From positions 249,316-313,315 of the IMG/VR virus record IMGVR_UViG_3300047319_001872: 64,000 nucleotides of DNA, one strand, 5' to 3'. The position numbers and the translations under genes were made by a program. This document shows, piece after piece, positions 48,181 to 51,813 of this stretch. The notes below the pieces were generated by a model. The model searched no databases. It saw only the letters and a list, made by a program, of their open reading frames with translations, and was not told the origin of the DNA. How positions within the stretch are numbered: the stretch's first letter is position 1; every line of letters begins with the position of its first letter.

Positions 48181-48816
48181 TTACTTCGCCAATTCTGCCT
48201 GGCGACGCTGCTTGCGTGGCATCGCTTTGTGTTGCTGGAGCTTCTGGGCAGCGAGCTCTGCGTCCGTGTACTGGACGTTGGTGGTGACCCCGATGTAGGG
48301 ACGCTTCAGTGCCACCTTAACTTCGCCGTCGTCTTGACGGTACACCGCGATATTGCCGGTCATGATGCCGTGGTACCACTGGCCGTCGAAGAGTGCCGCG
48401 ATTTCCGGTTGATGATCGAACTCGGCCTTCTCGTGACAGATGAGCAAGTACTTGACCAAGCCCCATTCACAGGTGCGTGCGCTCGCCGGTTGCGGACGGT
48501 GGGCCATGAACTGCCAGAAGTGCTGCTGCTTCAGGTAGTTCATGTAGGCTTCTTGCTGCTGAGCCATCTCGAGCGACTTGGCTTGCTCTTCCGGGGTTTG
48601 TTCCGGATTGGCTGCCAGGCCTTCCAGCGTGATCTGTTCCAGTTCATCGGCGTTCATCACGTCGTCGAGCACCGGCACGCTTTTGCGCGGTTCGGCTTCG
48701 GCTTGTTCCTGCATGGCTTGTTCGACCATGAGACCCTCTTGGATCTCTGCCAGTCGTGCAGCATCTTCTTCCGAGACGGGCAGCACAGCCTCGCTCTCTA
48801 CCTTAACATCCATCAT
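48181..48816 (-). CDS. Hypothetical protein with acidic N-half and basic C-tail
   Basis: TGATG overlap with upstream gene. Confidence 0.6.
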   Translation of the reverse strand: MMDVKVESEAVLPVSEEDAARLAEIQEGLMVEQAMQEQAEAEPRKSVPVLDDVMNADELEQITLEGLAANPEQTPEEQAKSLEMAQQQEAYMNYLKQQHFWQFMAHRPQPASARTCEWGLVKYLLICHEKAEFDHQPEIAALFDGQWYHGIMTGNIAVYRQDDGEVKVALKRPYIGVTTNVQYTDAELAAQKLQQHKAMPRKQRRQAELAK

Positions 48817-49592
48817 CAGTTCCACCGATCGCGTTTTCTGTTCTTGGGCAAGGCGGGCCGCCGGGAGCTTTTCCCAGGGTTATTCACCTCGAATGCGGGC
48901 ATAGCGTGTACAACTTCTGCCAAGCCCAATGGCTCGACGTCACTTCTCATGGGATGCACCATCCCAGTAAGTTTTTCCAGGATGTTGCGCTCACTCATCC
49001 CGCGACCGCGCAGTTCTGACTTCAGTTCATCCTGGGTCGCGACCACGATAATGGGTAGATCTGATTGCCTAAGCAGATGCGTGACGTGATTCCGAATCAG
49101 CATGTGCTCGTCAATATAGAGGATGGGGAGATCCTTTCGATCCAGGCGCCGCAGCATTCCATCTCCATCTGCTTCCACCACGGCCTTGAGAATATCCTTG
49201 ACAATCTTCTCATCCGCGGGATCAAGCGCATGCAAGGGGGTGTCGAGTGCGACCTGGAGATCGGAGACGTCCAGACCCGACCGGTACTCTACCTTAGTCT
49301 CAACTAGGAGCAGGTGCTTTTCCATCCCCTGAACAGGCCGTACACTGTAAGCTTCGATCACAAAAGGCGTCTTGCCTGGCGATTGCATTATGAACGGATC
49401 ACGCCATGCACCCTTCTCGTGAGAACTCAGTCGCATTACAACTTGACCGCCCAGCTCAATGTCGACGTGACTGACAGATTGATCGATCGGCGCACGGAGT
49501 TGTTGCTGGACATGATCAACGATCGCCACAATCCCATCGCCGTATTCCTGTACGATTGAGCGATAGAAGCCAGACTGTTCCGAATCGGTCAT
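48816..49592 (-). CDS. Hypothetical protein with basic/Trp C-tail
   Basis: ATGA overlap; ends KNRKRDRWN. Confidence 0.6.
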   Translation of the reverse strand: MTDSEQSGFYRSIVQEYGDGIVAIVDHVQQQLRAPIDQSVSHVDIELGGQVVMRLSSHEKGAWRDPFIMQSPGKTPFVIEAYSVRPVQGMEKHLLLVETKVEYRSGLDVSDLQVALDTPLHALDPADEKIVKDILKAVVEADGDGMLRRLDRKDLPILYIDEHMLIRNHVTHLLRQSDLPIIVVATQDELKSELRGRGMSERNILEKLTGMVHPMRSDVEPLGLAEVVHAMPAFEVNNPGKSSRRPALPKNRKRDRWN

Positions 49593-49897
49593 TCCCACCA
49601 CCTCCCTTTCTTATAGCGTGAGCCGGACTTCGGTCCATTCCGGCGCTTCTTCTTGCCCCGACGTTCATCGCGCGTCCGATAGTCCTGCATCGGGCCTTGG
49701 TTCATGTTGGTGTACGTTTTGGGTTCCGCAGGAGCGTTCCCATACAGCGACATCGAACTGGTATCTTGCGCAGCAACCGCAGCATTCAGCGCCGCCAGTT
49801 GCATCAGCATGCGAGCCCGGCTGCGAGTACTGCCTGGACTATAGTGAGCGATCGTGCCCACGTTGATGTGGGGCTTGGTGCGTTCGAACTTAGCCAT
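49589..49897 (-). CDS. Small basic protein starting with an EF-Tu-like N-terminal peptide
   Basis: MAKFERTKPHINVGTIAH vs bacterial EF-Tu KFERTKPHVNVGTIGH; GAGGGG RBS; abuts upstream stop and overlaps downstream start. Confidence 0.75.
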   Translation of the reverse strand: MAKFERTKPHINVGTIAHYSPGSTRSRARMLMQLAALNAAVAAQDTSSMSLYGNAPAEPKTYTNMNQGPMQDYRTRDERRGKKKRRNGPKSGSRYKKGRWWE

Positions 49898-50167
49898 CTA
49901 CAACCCCTCGAACCAGGAGACGACCATCGGGATCGCCAACACAAAGAAGAGTGCGACCGCACCGCGCTCGCGCCAATACCACTTGTCGTCTGGATACTGA
50001 TAGACAGTGCGCTTCAGCACGTACTCATCGACACCGTGCGTGACGATGCTTTTCGTGGTGACGGGCACTTGCTGGCCCTGGAAGTAAGCCCGCGTACCCC
50101 AGGCGCTGACGATCCACAACAACGAGTAGACGACGCGAAACACCGACCACCAGTTGATGTTATTCAC
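49898..50167 (-). CDS. Small 2-TM membrane protein
   Basis: GAGGAG RBS before GTG 50167; two hydrophobic segments. Confidence 0.55.
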   Translation of the reverse strand: MNNINWWSVFRVVYSLLWIVSAWGTRAYFQGQQVPVTTKSIVTHGVDEYVLKRTVYQYPDDKWYWRERGAVALFFVLAIPMVVSWFEGL

Positions 50168-50444
50168 TTTTCGTCTCCTCAGGCGCCGTCGCACAGACCT
50201 TACAACACAACCGGCGCTTGTAGCCCAAGAAGTGATGACGGCAATGCAGGCAAATACATTCGTACATGCCGTTTTCATGCGCGAAGTCTTCCGGCCAGTG
50301 ACGCTCCGTGCTTTGCGGATGCTTACGATTGAATCCGGCGATAATGGCGGCGTCCAGTTTATCGCGCTGGGCTTCCAGGCGCTGCACGATCGCTGCCCTG
50401 GCGATCTCGGCAGGTGTGGGGTGGGGCTGGGTCTCGTTGGTCAT
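50160..50444 (-). CDS. Small zinc-ribbon protein
   Basis: CICLHC...CCKVC; ATGA overlap. Confidence 0.6.
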   Translation of the reverse strand: MTNETQPHPTPAEIARAAIVQRLEAQRDKLDAAIIAGFNRKHPQSTERHWPEDFAHENGMYECICLHCRHHFLGYKRRLCCKVCATAPEETKSE

Positions 50445-50665
50445 GCTGCTTCTCGTTCTTGGTATCGTGCTAATGTGGCTTCGGCTTCTTCGAGTGCAGC
50501 GCGCACTTCTGCTAGGCGATTCGCTGCTTCCTCGACAGTCCAGGCTTCACCACCCCGTTGGGCGCTATGCACGATCCGCCCAAACTGATGCTGGATCGCG
50601 CGAGCGCCGCGCTCTTGTTCCTGTCGCCATGACGGCGCCCATGATTTGTTCTGACGCTTGGCCAT
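50441..50665 (-). CDS. Hypothetical coiled-coil protein (74 aa)
   Basis: ORF track; tight packing. Confidence 0.55.
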   Translation of the reverse strand: MAKRQNKSWAPSWRQEQERGARAIQHQFGRIVHSAQRGGEAWTVEEAANRLAEVRAALEEAEATLARYQEREAA

Positions 50666-50671
50666 GCTCGT

Positions 50672-50851
50672 TCACCGATGATTCCACCACTGACGACTAC
50701 GTTGGTTCTTCATGCGCTTAGCCTGTCGCTCTCGGTCTTCTTGACGTTGTTCTGCGGCGGACAATGGCGCTGCCATAAACTCCAGCTCTTCTTCCGTGGG
50801 TGAATTCGGATCTGGCGGAAAGAGTTGGTTGAGAATGCGCTTGACGCTCAT
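50672..50851 (-). CDS. Small protein with basic/WW C-tail
   Basis: AGGAGG RBS; ends RSRQWWNHR. Confidence 0.55.
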   Translation of the reverse strand: MSVKRILNQLFPPDPNSPTEEELEFMAAPLSAAEQRQEDRERQAKRMKNQRSRQWWNHR

Positions 50852-50859
50852 CACGCCTC

Positions 50860-51039
50860 CTAGAACAAATACCACATCAACCAGGCTGCCCCGGAGAGCA
50901 GAATGCCGATCACCAGAAAAGCCGCGGCGGCGATGCTTTGAAACGGCACCCGCTCAGGGGTGGCGAGGCCCAGTGCGGGCAGACCCACGCAAAGGACCGT
51001 CACCCAGATCGGCAACCAGTAAGAGTGAAAGGAGATCAT
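50860..51039 (-). CDS. Small 2-TM membrane protein (59 aa)
   Basis: ATG 51039 overlaps upstream TGA; two hydrophobic helices. Confidence 0.55.
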   Translation of the reverse strand: MISFHSYWLPIWVTVLCVGLPALGLATPERVPFQSIAAAAFLVIGILLSGAAWLMWYLF

Positions 51040-51392
51040 GTCGTGGTAAGGATGCTGGGGAGCTTCAAGATGATGTTCTCGAGTGCCGTGGGGACACCGC
51101 GATCGCGCGCCGAGCCGCGCGACATGGCAAACGAGAAATAGGTACGGATCTTCGCGACCAGTTCCGTATCGGCAACATCGCACGTGTAGATGCTGGTGTT
51201 CGCATTCGGCGTGCCTTGAAACGAATCGATCAGCAGCGCGCAGGCGCGCGACATGTAGGGTTCGGCACTGATGTCTTTCTCATCGAAGACCTCCGGGTGC
51301 TGACGAATGAAACTGGTCCAGCCACGGATAATCCCAACACTGGCGATGAGGTTATCCGGCTCCACGGTTTCCCGTGTTTGATCGAAATTCAT
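51036..51392 (-). CDS. Hypothetical protein
   Basis: GGAG RBS; ATGA overlap at 51389-51392. Confidence 0.55.
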   Translation of the reverse strand: MNFDQTRETVEPDNLIASVGIIRGWTSFIRQHPEVFDEKDISAEPYMSRACALLIDSFQGTPNANTSIYTCDVADTELVAKIRTYFSFAMSRGSARDRGVPTALENIILKLPSILTTT

Positions 51393-51640
51393 TTGCGTTT
51401 TCTCCGGCGTTCTTTCTTGGGGGTATTCCACCACTCGCGCTGACGACTATACTGGGTGTCAAAGATGTTGCTCTTCGGCACCGGTTCGGTCTCAGCGCAG
51501 ACGTAGCTGCTATTGGCCAACACTTCGATAATGGCTTTCGTGACGGTGGCGCTGGTACCATGCGAGACCATCAGAATCCGCTGCTGGCTTGTCGCCGCAT
51601 GAATCGCCCGCAAGTCATCATCGTCGACAATGGCGGTCAT
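51389..51640 (-). CDS. Small protein with WW/basic C-tail
   Basis: AAGGA RBS; ends RQREWWNTPKKERRRKRK. Confidence 0.6.
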   Translation of the reverse strand: MTAIVDDDDLRAIHAATSQQRILMVSHGTSATVTKAIIEVLANSSYVCAETEPVPKSNIFDTQYSRQREWWNTPKKERRRKRK

Positions 51641-51813
51641 GAAACTATTCCTTCAAAGACCCAGCGGCGCAAAGCCACTTGGGCAGCAATCTGGCGATCC
51701 AGTGCGCCGCGCCGATACCCGCTCATCGTCTGCGAATTGCCACTGGCGTTGGTATTACGAATCCTGACACGATTCTTTATCGTCGTGCGTTTGACTACAT
51801 TCACCCCGAACAT
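51637..51813 (-). CDS. Possible 58-aa basic protein, not in the ORF track
   Basis: Hand translation MFGVNVVKRTT...RRWVFEGIVS*; GAGG upstream; ATGA overlap with 51640. Confidence 0.4.
   Translation of the reverse strand: MFGVNVVKRTTIKNRVRIRNTNASGNSQTMSGYRRGALDRQIAAQVALRRWVFEGIVS

What the first reader, a model, noticed from the sequence alone, without database searches (positions are those of the whole stretch)
48181..51813. Operon of small proteins sharing basic, Trp-containing C-terminal tails
Seen: otherwise unrelated, tightly coupled genes end in KNRKRDRWN (48816), RRGKKKRR...YKKGRWWE (49589), KRMKNQRSRQWWNHR (50672), RQREWWNTPKKERRRKRK (51389) and MPRKQRRQAELAK (48181). Chimallin itself ends in SRW. 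Inference: a shared C-terminal address tag for ribosome/RNA binding, membrane interface or phage-nucleus targeting.
Basis: partly seen in the sequence, partly recalled or inferred. Interest (0 to 1): 0.6.

Follow-up and report, generated by a model that had tools for sequence, protein, structure and literature searches.

The report
Conserved basic tryptophan tails in phage
Four unrelated small proteins encoded just upstream of the nuclear-shell gene of a soil jumbo phage end in strongly conserved, positively charged, tryptophan-bearing tails that look like docking peptides for RNA or another conserved partner, but the partner is not yet known.

Summary
The window is the end of a 313-kb nucleus-forming jumbo phage from rhizosphere metagenomes. 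Its nearest named relative is Burkholderia phage FLC9. Window 48181-51813 (minus strand) holds 11 tightly coupled small genes directly upstream of chimallin.

Four products (83, 59, 102 and 258 aa) end in tails with 8-10 Lys/Arg in the last 20 residues, around an invariant Trp or Trp-Trp followed by Asn/Glu. A fifth (210 aa) has a basic tail without Trp that is not conserved.

- Among my 360 ORF calls for the genome, the only four tails with at least 8 K/R plus Trp are these four (P about 1e-7).
- Ribosome-binding sites of downstream genes do not explain them.
- In relatives the protein bodies diverge fast, while the tails stay almost invariant despite synonymous changes (pN/pS 0.05-0.11 against 0.28-0.43).
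- The modelled tails (102- and 258-aa proteins) have low AlphaFold2 confidence, read here as disorder. All four are very hydrophilic, and three of the four sit on acidic bodies.

So they are selected peptide modules, but four different sequences sharing a core, not one tag. My best guess (about 0.35) is arginine-rich-motif-like binding of structured RNA or the ribosome. Shell docking, membrane binding, nuclear import and degron roles remain open. The 102-aa protein also mimics the N-terminus of EF-Tu.

The parts
51637..51813 (-). g58: first gene of the cassette, 58 aa, pI about 12. A conserved R-x-W-[AV]-F-E lies near its C-terminus, but it has no polybasic tail.
   Evidence: pN/pS about 0.3 across relatives.
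51389..51640 (-). g83: 83 aa, with a slightly acidic body and a tail ...YSRQREWWNTPKKERRRKRK. The tail codons are 51392-51451. Its stop overlaps the next start (ATGA).
   Evidence: Alignment A1 of 15 homologues: 14 of the last 20 columns are invariant, against 0 of 63 elsewhere. pN/pS is 0.08 in the tail and 0.40 in the body. A distant homologue in L019 keeps ...RRRRWWEVSKRDRKR.
51036..51392 (-). g118: 118 aa, acidic, no basic tail. The true start is the ATG of the ATGA overlap.
50860..51039 (-). TM60: 59-aa protein with two hydrophobic segments, probably a small membrane protein.
50672..50851 (-). g65 (probably 59 aa, starting at ATG 50851 behind TAGGAGG): acidic body and tail ...RERQAKRMKNQRSRQWWNHR. 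The tail codons are 50675-50734.
   Evidence: pN/pS is 0.11 in the tail and 0.28 in the body. It is present only in part of the lineages: absent from FLC9 and from L015-L018.
50441..50665 (-). g74: 74 aa, with a predicted coiled-coil-like C-terminus and no basic tail.
50160..50444 (-). g94: 94 aa, a Cys/His-rich putative zinc-ribbon protein.
   Evidence: phrog_8931 at 5e-8. Its homologue in L019 is fused to a longer protein that ends in a K/R tail.
49898..50167 (-). TM89: 89 aa (GTG start). It has an N-terminal NWW-flanked apolar stretch (below the 1.6 hydropathy cut-off) and one clear C-terminal hydrophobic segment, so it is a probable membrane protein.
49589..49897 (-). g102: 102 aa. Its N-terminal residues, up to about residue 57, resemble the N-terminus of EF-Tu, with the P-loop destroyed. 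Its C-terminal tail is ...RDERRGKKKRRNGPKSGSRYKKGRWWE (codons 49592-49672). The R-W-W codons AGG TGG TGG also form the Shine-Dalgarno site of the next gene.
   Evidence: EF-Tu matches: PDB phmmer 3e-6 and NCBIfam TIGR00485 2.8e-6. Alignment A2: KFERTKPH.NVGTI.H and Y-K-x-x-x-W-W-E are invariant, with many synonymous changes. The AlphaFold2 model is low-confidence throughout, mean pLDDT 58, read as mostly disordered.
48816..49592 (-). g258: 258 aa. It has a variable N-terminal part, a small alpha/beta domain, and then a conserved, low-confidence (probably disordered) last 45 aa or so, ending ...NNPGKSSRRPALPKNRKRDRWN. The tail codons are 48819-48884.
   Evidence: Alignment A3 of 14 sequences: 13 of the last 20 columns are invariant. 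pN/pS is 0.05 in the tail and 0.43 in the body. AlphaFold2 gives pLDDT about 80 for the domain and 41-55 for the tail.
48181..48813 (-). g210: 210 aa, with a very acidic body (net -20). Its tail ...MPRKQRRQAELAK is basic, has no Trp, and varies between lineages.
   Evidence: pN/pS is 0.28 in the tail and 0.34 in the body.
47404..48021 (-). g205: an HNH homing-endonuclease-like gene between the cassette and chimallin. It is not part of the tail set.
   Evidence: phrog_2081 at 5.7e-13. Present only in the window and FLC9, absent from L002-L007.
45373..47283 (-). Chimallin (the nuclear shell protein), ending ...GFSSRW. It has its own conserved promoter-like motif about 95 nt upstream.

Best explanation
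The stretch is a lineage-specific accessory gene cassette. It is tightly translationally coupled and lies between a conserved divergent gene and the chimallin gene, in FLC9-like chimalliviruses from rhizosphere metagenomes.

Four of its products carry strongly basic (+7 to +8 over 20 aa) C-terminal short linear motifs, which are probably disordered. The motifs are built round an invariant Trp or Trp-Trp followed by Asn/Glu. They are attached to unrelated, fast-evolving bodies, three of which are acidic.

I take the tails to be docking modules of the arginine-rich-motif kind. Each would bind a conserved structured RNA, most plausibly ribosomal RNA on the host ribosome, or possibly phage mRNA. 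Lys/Arg would contact phosphates and Trp would stack on an unpaired base. This would tether different effector bodies to the translation apparatus.

Shown here:
- The tails exist and are clustered.
- They are under peptide-level purifying selection.
- The two tails that were modelled have low AlphaFold2 confidence, read as disorder, and all four are very hydrophilic.
- They are independent of Shine-Dalgarno constraints.

Inferred, not shown:
- The ligand (RNA or ribosome).
- The binding mode.
- The time of expression.
For: - Clustering: P is about 1e-7.
- Selection acts on the peptide. pN/pS in the tail against the body is 0.08/0.40 (g83), 0.11/0.28 (g65) and 0.05/0.43 (g258), with many synonymous changes inside the tails.
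- Invariant tail columns: 14/20, 9/20 and 13/20 in alignments of 14-15 homologues.
- Exact residue-level conservation, including non-basic residues such as P, A, L, N, D and Y, argues for a stereospecific and itself conserved partner rather than loose electrostatics.
- The modelled tails have low AlphaFold2 confidence. All four tails are very hydrophilic, with mean hydrophobicity -0.6 to -1.4.
- The composition (K/R plus G/P/S/N/Q and one or two aromatic residues) is that of arginine-rich RNA-binding peptides, which bind GNRA-type loops in phages (PMC9539567).
- There is a direct precedent in the same virus family. The early protein PhiKZ014 holds the flipped-out U1 of 5S rRNA with Arg10, Lys15, Trp18 and Arg23 of a terminal segment (PMC10914614).
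- One tail-bearing protein (g102) also conserves an EF-Tu-like N-terminus, which points to the translation apparatus.
- A different cassette at the same site in a phage whose chimallin is only 50% identical again carries basic, Trp-containing ends.
Against: - There is no direct evidence for any ligand.
- No known RNA-binding domain or family is detected in any body.
- The tails have no sequence match in the PDB.
- Lys is about as frequent as Arg, whereas classical ARMs are Arg-dominated.
- Trp-Trp doublets are more typical of membrane interfaces.
- The cassette also encodes two small probable membrane proteins, and the L019 cassette includes MinD/FtsA-like amphipathic ends.
- Two tails end in RW plus 1-2 residues, like the conserved chimallin C-terminus.
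- Part of the nucleotide invariance in the last 5-8 codons comes from overlap with the next gene's ribosome-binding site.
Confidence: 0.35

Rival explanations
1. Shell docking by mimicry of the chimallin C-terminus. The terminal RW(x0-2)-COOH of g258 (DRWN) and g102 (GRWWE) would plug into the pocket that normally receives the last segment (CTS2) of a neighbouring chimallin. This would tether the proteins to the nuclear shell.
For: - CTS2 is the last 10 or so residues of chimallin. It docks on another protomer and is needed for assembly (bioRxiv 10.1101/2022.02.14.480162).
- Among the 147 best full-length chimallin relatives, 87 have Trp in the last 3 residues and 31 end exactly in RW. The family consensus ends ...RWx.
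- RSF1 and FLC6 chimallins end NRW.
- RW within the last 6 residues occurs 5 times in this genome against 1.6 expected. The five are chimallin, the large terminase, a 583-aa protein, g258 and g102.
- The cassette lies next to chmA.
Against: - In g83 the WW sits 13 residues from the end, and in g65 it sits 4 residues from the end.
- Chimallin tails are G/S/N/Q-rich, not polybasic.
- Profile-profile comparison finds no similarity.
- The enrichment of terminal RW is modest.
Confidence: 0.15
2. Interfacial membrane anchor. The polybasic stretch plus Trp would bind the anionic inner membrane or the early infection vesicle, in the manner of unstructured polybasic-aromatic membrane motifs.
For: - Two small probable membrane proteins lie in the same cassette. 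One of them starts with an NWW-flanked apolar stretch.
- The L019 cassette has two C-termini that resemble MinD/FtsA amphipathic targeting helices, with hydrophobic moment 0.57-0.79.
- Chimalliviruses pass through a membrane-bound early vesicle (10.1101/2023.09.20.558163, listed).
Against: - The four tails have mean hydrophobicity of -0.6 to -1.4 and contain Pro/Gly, so they cannot form an amphipathic helix with a hydrophobic face.
- Generic lipid binding would tolerate K/R swaps and shuffling, yet residue identities are invariant.
Confidence: 0.15
3. Linear import signal for the phage nucleus. The tails would be NLS-like bipartite basic peptides recognised by the import machinery.
For: - The tails resemble mono- and bipartite eukaryotic NLSs in composition.
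- The genes sit next to the shell gene.
Against: - Such tails are confined to this operon plus a handful of other gene calls. For example the DNA polymerase encoded next to the cassette lacks one.
- Published work finds no linear signal, and finds recognition of folded surface patches instead (PMC11087766).
- The four tails differ from each other.
Confidence: 0.08
4. C-terminal degron. The basic ends would be recognised by a host AAA+ protease, as with the MuA-type ClpX signal. This would limit the lifetime of the proteins or titrate the protease.
For: From my own knowledge, not tested here: ClpX recognises basic C-terminal signals of the RRKKAI type. The g83 tail ends in a comparable K/R run.
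Against: - Three of the four tails end in W-N, W-W-E or N-H-R rather than in a K/R run.
- Strict conservation of 20 or more residues exceeds what a degron needs.
Confidence: 0.07
5. By-product or chance. Purine-rich Shine-Dalgarno sequences of the overlapping downstream genes would force K/R/G/W codons at the ends of upstream genes.
For: - The last codons of g83, g102, g258 and g65 contain GGAGA, GGGAGGTGG, GGTGGA and GGTGA 6-11 nt before the next start.
- Synonymous divergence is somewhat lower in the tails (0.33-0.50) than in the bodies (0.54-0.77).
Against: - Outside the operon, 144 coupled genes have 1.03 K/R in their last 8 aa, against 0.82 in 208 uncoupled genes (P = 0.10). That is nowhere near 8-10 per 20 aa.
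- The basic regions extend 20-27 codons upstream of the junction.
- Lowered pN/pS cannot come from a nucleotide-level constraint.
- Family variants with a different junction sequence, such as FLC9 (AGG AAC TGG TGG...RRNWWE), still keep WWE.
Confidence: 0.03

Closest known systems
Arginine-rich-motif (ARM) RNA-binding peptides of phage and viral regulators (lambda/P22 N with boxB, HIV Rev and Tat)
   Same: Both are short, disordered, highly basic segments at a protein terminus. In lambda N and Rev (from my own knowledge) an aromatic Trp stacks on RNA. ARMs bind GNRA-type loops in phages (PMC9539567).
   Different: These tails are C-terminal, mix Lys with Arg, and carry a WW-N/E core. No RNA target or antitermination context is known, and there is no sequence homology.
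PhiKZ014, the early ribosome-binding protein of chimallivirus PhiKZ
   Same: It comes from the same virus family. A terminal segment uses Arg10, Lys15, Trp18 and Arg23 to hold a flipped-out base of 5S rRNA (PMC10914614).
   Different: PhiKZ014 is a larger multidomain protein and its binding segment is an N-terminal helix. No homology with any cassette protein was detected.
Chimallin C-terminal segment 2 (CTS2)
   Same: It is a terminal peptide that docks onto a chimallin protomer. In this clade it ends in RW or RW+1-2 residues, as do g258 and g102.
   Different: CTS2 is G/S/N/Q-rich and not basic. Two of the four tails do not have Trp at the end. No profile similarity was found.
Amphipathic membrane-targeting sequences (MinD, FtsA type)
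   Same: They are C-terminal, contain basic and aromatic residues, and are modular.
   Different: They need a hydrophobic helical face. The four tails are far too polar and contain Pro/Gly. Only two proteins of the distant L019 cassette look like this type.
Elongation factor Tu (relevant to g102 only)
   Same: Residues 2 to about 59 of g102 align with residues 4 to about 57 of EF-Tu. The first 16 or so residues are nearly identical and invariant in the family.
   Different: g102 is 102 aa against about 394 aa. The P-loop GHVDHGKT is replaced, there are no further G-domain motifs, and the model is mostly low-confidence. It is a mimic or remnant, not an EF-Tu.

Membership tests
Arginine-rich-motif RNA-binding peptide | A short (10-25 aa), highly basic segment that is unstructured on its own. 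| tested here: met
   There are 8-10 K/R in the last 20 aa. pLDDT is 41-57 in the modelled tails of g102 and g258. Lys is about as frequent as Arg.
Arginine-rich-motif RNA-binding peptide | Specific binding to a structured RNA element. | not testable with these tools
No Rfam element lies in 44500-53500.
Chimallin CTS2-like shell-docking peptide | An aromatic residue (RW) at the extreme C-terminus, or within 2 residues of it. | tested here: inconclusive
   Met by g258 (RWN) and g102 (RWWE). Not met by g83 (WW 13 residues from the end) or g65 (WW 4 residues from the end).
Chimallin CTS2-like shell-docking peptide | Sequence or profile similarity to chimallin C-terminal segments. | tested here: not met
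   hhalign of A3 and A2 against the chimallin alignment A4 gives probability 1.2% or less.
Amphipathic membrane-targeting sequence (MinD/FtsA type) | An amphipathic helix with a hydrophobic face. | tested here: not met
   Mean hydrophobicity is -0.6 to -1.4, and Pro/Gly lie inside the tails.
General nuclear-import tag of the phage nucleus | The tag is shared by the proteins that must enter the nucleus. | tested here: not met
   Such tails are confined to this operon plus a handful of other gene calls, and the adjacent DNA polymerase has none. Published work finds no linear signal (PMC11087766).
Elongation factor Tu (g102) | A GTPase G domain with P-loop GHVDHGKT and a full length of about 394 aa. 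| tested here: not met
   The P-loop position reads AHYSPGST. The protein is 102 aa. The score of 26 bits is far below the TIGR00485 cut-off of 522.
ClpX C-motif-2 degron (MuA type) | A C-terminal basic signal recognised by ClpX. | not tested
   This is only a compositional resemblance of the g83 end, recalled from memory.

The most novel reading that the evidence does not exclude
The tails are the first linear address peptides of a nucleus-forming phage. In this reading, a family of polybasic W(W)-N/E C-terminal motifs delivers interchangeable, fast-evolving accessory proteins to one conserved structure of the infected cell. That structure could be the chimallin lattice, through the pocket that receives the conserved RW end of chimallin, or ribosomes gathered at the shell. 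The cassette next to chmA would then work as a swap-in site for tagged effectors.
Probability: 0.15. Interest if true: 0.8.

Novelty: new variant of a known kind. Interest (0 to 1): 0.5.

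Why it matters
How proteins are sorted in nucleus-forming phages is an open question, and published work has found no linear signal. Here a set of unrelated accessory proteins shares short, strictly conserved, transplantable-looking C-terminal peptides, and a cultivable relative exists (FLC9 on Burkholderia glumae). This makes the question testable: fuse the last 25 residues to GFP and see where it goes and what it binds.

Whatever the target, the pattern of variable body plus invariant tail marks these as probable host-takeover or counter-defence effectors. The site next to chmA appears to be a hotspot where such genes are exchanged.

The EF-Tu N-terminal mimic is a separate lead. 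It points to phage interference with translation, or with defences that watch EF-Tu.

Tried and rejected
- **Family scans.** Pfam, PHROGs and NCBIfam scans of all cassette proteins gave no function. The exceptions were g205 (HNH endonuclease-like), g94 (PHROGs of unknown function) and the EF-Tu-like start of g102.
- **tblastn against GenBank phages.** Only FLC9 carries homologues.
- **Co-folding.** I co-folded the chimallin core (residues 62-590, 111-row alignment) with the last 54 residues of g258. The score was 0.00 and the verdict was "no answer". This is no evidence either way.
- **Profile-profile comparison.** The g258 and g102 alignments showed nothing against the chimallin alignment.
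- **PDB sequence searches.** Searches with the g102 and g83 tails, and with the chimallin C-terminus, gave nothing usable.
- **Foldseek.** The g258 C-terminal model had no match with E below 0.6 in the PDB.
- **ESM Atlas.** The look-up of g210 gave no usable hit.
- **DNA pattern for WWNTPKK.** In viral contigs, the in-frame hits carrying the basic tail are all g83 homologues. The 120 or more hits in bacterial genomes are out-of-frame chance matches, so no host protein with this tail was found.
- **Shine-Dalgarno by-product.** Rejected as the main cause.
- **Early-promoter claim.** A TATATTAG match lies 36 nt upstream of g58, but it is not conserved in the more distant cassettes L015-L018. The expression class is therefore left open.
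- **Sequencing runs.** Only rhizosphere DNA metagenomes hold the stretch and there is no RNA run.
- **The other WWN-tailed protein.** The 269-aa protein at genome 209922-210731 is itself lineage-specific, so it gives no functional hint.
- **Rfam.** No RNA family in 44500-53500.

Full report
**What the window is.** The 64-kb window is the last fifth of a single 313,315-bp contig with 56% G+C. It encodes a chimallin (45373-47283, minus strand). tblastn finds this protein in 118 jumbo-phage records, several annotated as nuclear shell protein, and close relatives carry the Pfam chimallin family. It also encodes a divergent family B DNA polymerase and a large terminase. The nearest named phage is Burkholderia phage FLC9 (chimallin 80% identical). 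Near-identical contigs come from rhizosphere metagenomes.

**Anatomy of the stretch.** Reading the minus strand from 51813 to 48181 gives 11 genes: g58, g83, g118, TM60, g65, g74, g94, TM89, g102, g258 and g210.
- The junctions are ATGA overlaps (five times), then -8, 0, +2, +6 and +8 nt.
- An HNH homing-endonuclease-like gene follows (47404-48021; phrog_2081), and then chimallin.
- Several ORFs in the mechanical list start too early. The starts I use are those directly behind the stop of the previous gene.
- An all-against-all BLASTP shows no relationship between the proteins, apart from a 7-residue match between the tails of g83 and g65.
- No Pfam, PHROG or NCBIfam function is found for the tail-bearing proteins.

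**Check of the observation.** All five quoted C-termini are there.
- Four tails (g83, g65, g102, g258) have 8-10 Lys/Arg in the last 20 residues, plus Trp.
- The fifth (g210) has 7 K/R and no Trp.
- With a crude ORF caller of my own (360 genes), only nine genes in the genome have 7 or more K/R in the last 20 residues, and five of them are in this stretch (P = 1.4e-7).
- The only four tails with 8 or more K/R plus Trp are all here (P = 1e-7).
- Internal 20-residue windows of the proteome predict about one such tail by chance.
- Trp near the C-terminus is not enriched genome-wide, so this is a local property of the cassette.

**Not a by-product of ribosome-binding sites.** The ends of these genes do overlap Shine-Dalgarno-like sequences of the next gene. 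In g102, for example, the codons AGG TGG TGG read as part of GGGAGGTGG. This does not explain the tails, for three reasons.
- Outside the operon, genes followed closely by another gene have 1.03 K/R in their last eight residues, against 0.82 in the others (P = 0.10).
- The basic regions run 20-27 codons upstream of the junction.
- The selection is on the peptide, as the next section shows.

**Conservation.** Related cassettes come from IMG/VR contigs (L002-L007), FLC9 (L001) and further metagenome contigs (L015-L018).
- Chimallin is 78-100% identical across these loci, but the small proteins are only 36-100% identical.
- The N-terminal part of g258 is replaced outright in some loci.
- Synonymous divergence is 0.45-0.77 in the cassette against 0.20 in chimallin. 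This suggests a separate, recombining history for the cassette.
- Against this background the tails barely change, as the table shows (alignments; pN/pS).

| Protein | Invariant columns, last 20 | Invariant columns, rest | pN/pS tail | pN/pS body |
|---|---|---|---|---|
| g83 | 14/20 | 0/63 | 0.08 | 0.40 |
| g258 | 13/20 | 19/99 | 0.05 | 0.43 |
| g65 | no family alignment made | no family alignment made | 0.11 | 0.28 |
| g102 | 9/20 | 23/82 | 0.24 | 0.33 |
| g210 | no family alignment made | no family alignment made | 0.28 | 0.34 |

- Synonymous changes are frequent inside the tails.
- The g210 tail differs between lineages.
- Genes without basic tails (g118, g94, g58, chimallin) show no such drop in pN/pS.
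- The shared core of the four tails is R-x(0-1)-W(W)-N/E with K/R runs on one or both sides. Otherwise each family has its own sequence.

**Physical character.**
- AlphaFold2 with the family alignments gives a model of g102 that is low-confidence throughout (mean pLDDT 58), which I read as mostly disordered.
- In g258 it gives a small alpha/beta domain (pLDDT about 80), followed by a conserved last 45 residues or so with pLDDT 41-55.
- Three of the four bodies are acidic (net -4, -5 and -13; the g210 body is -20), while the g102 body is basic (+6). The tails carry +7 to +8.
- The tails are very hydrophilic (mean hydrophobicity -0.6 to -1.4) and contain Pro and Gly. They are not amphipathic membrane helices of the MinD/FtsA type.

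**Distribution.**
- The cassette is absent from RSF1, FLC6 and RTH11 (chimallin about 31% identical). There chimallin sits directly beside the conserved divergent gene.
- Among metagenomic relatives with 44-50% identical chimallin, one locus has no cassette (L021). One has a cassette with enzyme-domain genes and no such tails (L020).
- A third (L019) has a different eight-gene cassette. Two of its proteins have homologues here: one related to g83, and one related to g94 that is fused to a longer protein. Its products again end in basic, often Trp-containing peptides such as ...RRRRWWEVSKRDRKR...ERRKHW...QHRWSKA...KRVSKSRKKK and ...RKSKRTFRRKKR. Two further C-termini look like amphipathic membrane-targeting helices.
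- The site next to chmA is therefore a hotspot for accessory genes, and basic Trp-bearing ends recur there.

**What the tails might bind.** Exact conservation of a probably disordered peptide points to a specific and itself conserved partner.

*Structured RNA, probably the ribosome (my best reading, 0.35).*
- The composition is that of arginine-rich RNA-binding peptides, which in phages cap GNRA-type loops (PMC9539567).
- In the same virus family, the early protein PhiKZ014 grips the flipped-out first base of 5S rRNA with Arg10, Lys15, Trp18 and Arg23 of a terminal segment (PMC10914614).
- One tail-bearing protein also mimics EF-Tu (see below).
- This is inference. No binding was or could be tested.

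*Shell docking.*
- A phmmer search of 1.8 billion representatives found 1,137 chimallin relatives.
- Of the 147 best full-length ones, 87 have Trp within the last three residues and 31 end in RW.
- The last 10 or so residues (CTS2) dock on another protomer and are needed for assembly.
- g258 (RWN) and g102 (RWWE) fit this end pattern, but g83 and g65 do not.
- Profile comparison shows no similarity.
- A co-folding job gave no answer, so it is not counted either way.

*Other readings.*
- Membrane binding is kept open by the two probable membrane proteins in the cassette and by the L019 amphipathic ends. It is weakened by the polarity and the strict sequence conservation of the four tails.
- A general nuclear-import tag is unlikely. 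Such tails are confined to this operon plus a handful of other gene calls, and for example the adjacent DNA polymerase lacks one. Published work finds surface-patch recognition rather than linear signals (PMC11087766).
- A degron role is possible but untested.

**The EF-Tu mimic.**
- Residues 2 to about 59 of g102 align with residues 4 to about 57 of EF-Tu (PDB phmmer 3e-6; TIGR00485 2.8e-6).
- The segment KFERTKPH.NVGTI.H is invariant in 15 homologues, with many synonymous changes. It is therefore selected as a peptide, not merely as an initiation region.
- The P-loop is destroyed, so g102 is not a GTPase.
- What it mimics EF-Tu for is unknown.

**Novelty and verdict.**
- I found no description of these tails. 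The FLC9 homologues are annotated as hypothetical proteins.
- The kind of thing, a basic disordered docking peptide, is known. New here are its recurrence as a strictly conserved W(W)-N/E-centred module on several unrelated proteins of one cassette beside chmA, and its possible link to the conserved RW end of chimallin.
- Expression timing is also open. A PhiKZ-type promoter-like word (TATATTAC; PMC7058600) occurs 14 times in the genome (8.7 expected), and 9 of those sites are intergenic. The TATATTAG variant before g58 is not conserved in the more distant cassettes, whereas chimallin has its own conserved motif.

Noticed in passing
window 49589-49897 (-): The first residues of g102, up to about residue 57, resemble the N-terminus of elongation factor Tu. 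KFERTKPH.NVGTI.H is invariant in 15 homologues despite many synonymous changes, and the P-loop is destroyed. It could be a decoy or mimic aimed at translation, or at a defence that acts on EF-Tu. PHROG 27465 (unknown function) matches the same segment.
   Followed up: partly
window 45373-45402 (-), and chimallin relatives P0044-P0193: The extreme C-terminus of chimallin is widely conserved as RW or RW+1-2 residues: 87 of 147 relatives have Trp in the last 3 residues and 31 end in RW. PhiPA3 ends in GFY. This looks like the anchor of the CTS2 docking segment.
   Followed up: yes
genome 9502-11679 (+) (locus L013); L022-L026: The large terminase ends in ARW. Close relatives end in SRW (L026) and RPWR (FLC9), RTH11 ends in FSWA, and RSF1/FLC6 end in TVY/TIY. 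A 583-aa phrog_1735 protein (genome 206816-208567) ends in DRWE. Terminal RW may be a more general shell-contact feature, but the enrichment is modest (5 observed, 1.6 expected).
   Followed up: partly
window 47404-48021 (-): An HNH homing-endonuclease-like gene is inserted between the cassette and chimallin. It is present in the window and in FLC9 but absent from the otherwise near-identical contigs L002-L007, so it is probably a mobile element.
   Followed up: partly
loci L019, L020, L021, L017, compared with window 47284-51859: The gap between the conserved divergent gene of about 370 aa and chmA is an accessory-gene hotspot. It is empty in L021, RSF1, FLC6 and RTH11. L020 has a cassette with Pfam enzyme domains (Nuc_deoxyri_tr2, 2OG-FeII_Oxy_2). 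L017 has a GNAT acetyltransferase inserted. L019 has a different tailed cassette.
   Followed up: partly
window 45373-51813: Synonymous divergence between lineages is 0.45-0.77 in the cassette genes but 0.20 in the adjacent chimallin. This suggests recombination or a separate history for the cassette.
   Followed up: no
genome-wide, e.g. window 62494, 38931, 33913, 14895 (-); chimallin leader, window about 47350-47400: A PhiKZ/201phi2-1-type promoter-like motif (GATTCAAA...TTTCAG..CCTATATTAC) occurs 14 times (TATATTA[CG]; 8.7 expected). Thirteen copies are on the minus strand, and 9 are intergenic although only about 9% of the genome is non-coding. Of those 9, 8 lie 31-125 nt before a same-strand ORF start. 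Chimallin has a conserved variant (ACATATTAC).
   Followed up: partly
genome 209922-210731 (-) (locus L011): A 269-aa lineage-specific protein elsewhere in the genome ends ...HMWWNVPGKLLRKLFNRRK, which has the same WWN-plus-basic pattern as g83. Its only database relative is a 24% identical FLC9 protein.
   Followed up: partly
window 50160-50444 (-); L019 3597-4265: g94 is a Cys/His-rich putative zinc-ribbon protein (phrog_8931). In L019 its homologue forms the N-terminus of a 222-aa protein that ends in a K/R tail.
   Followed up: no
window 48022-48180: The spacer after g210 holds two short inverted repeats (AGACAG...CTGTCT and TAGCCAGT...ACTGGCTA). They are not called as terminators by the simple scan, and their role is unknown.
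   Followed up: no
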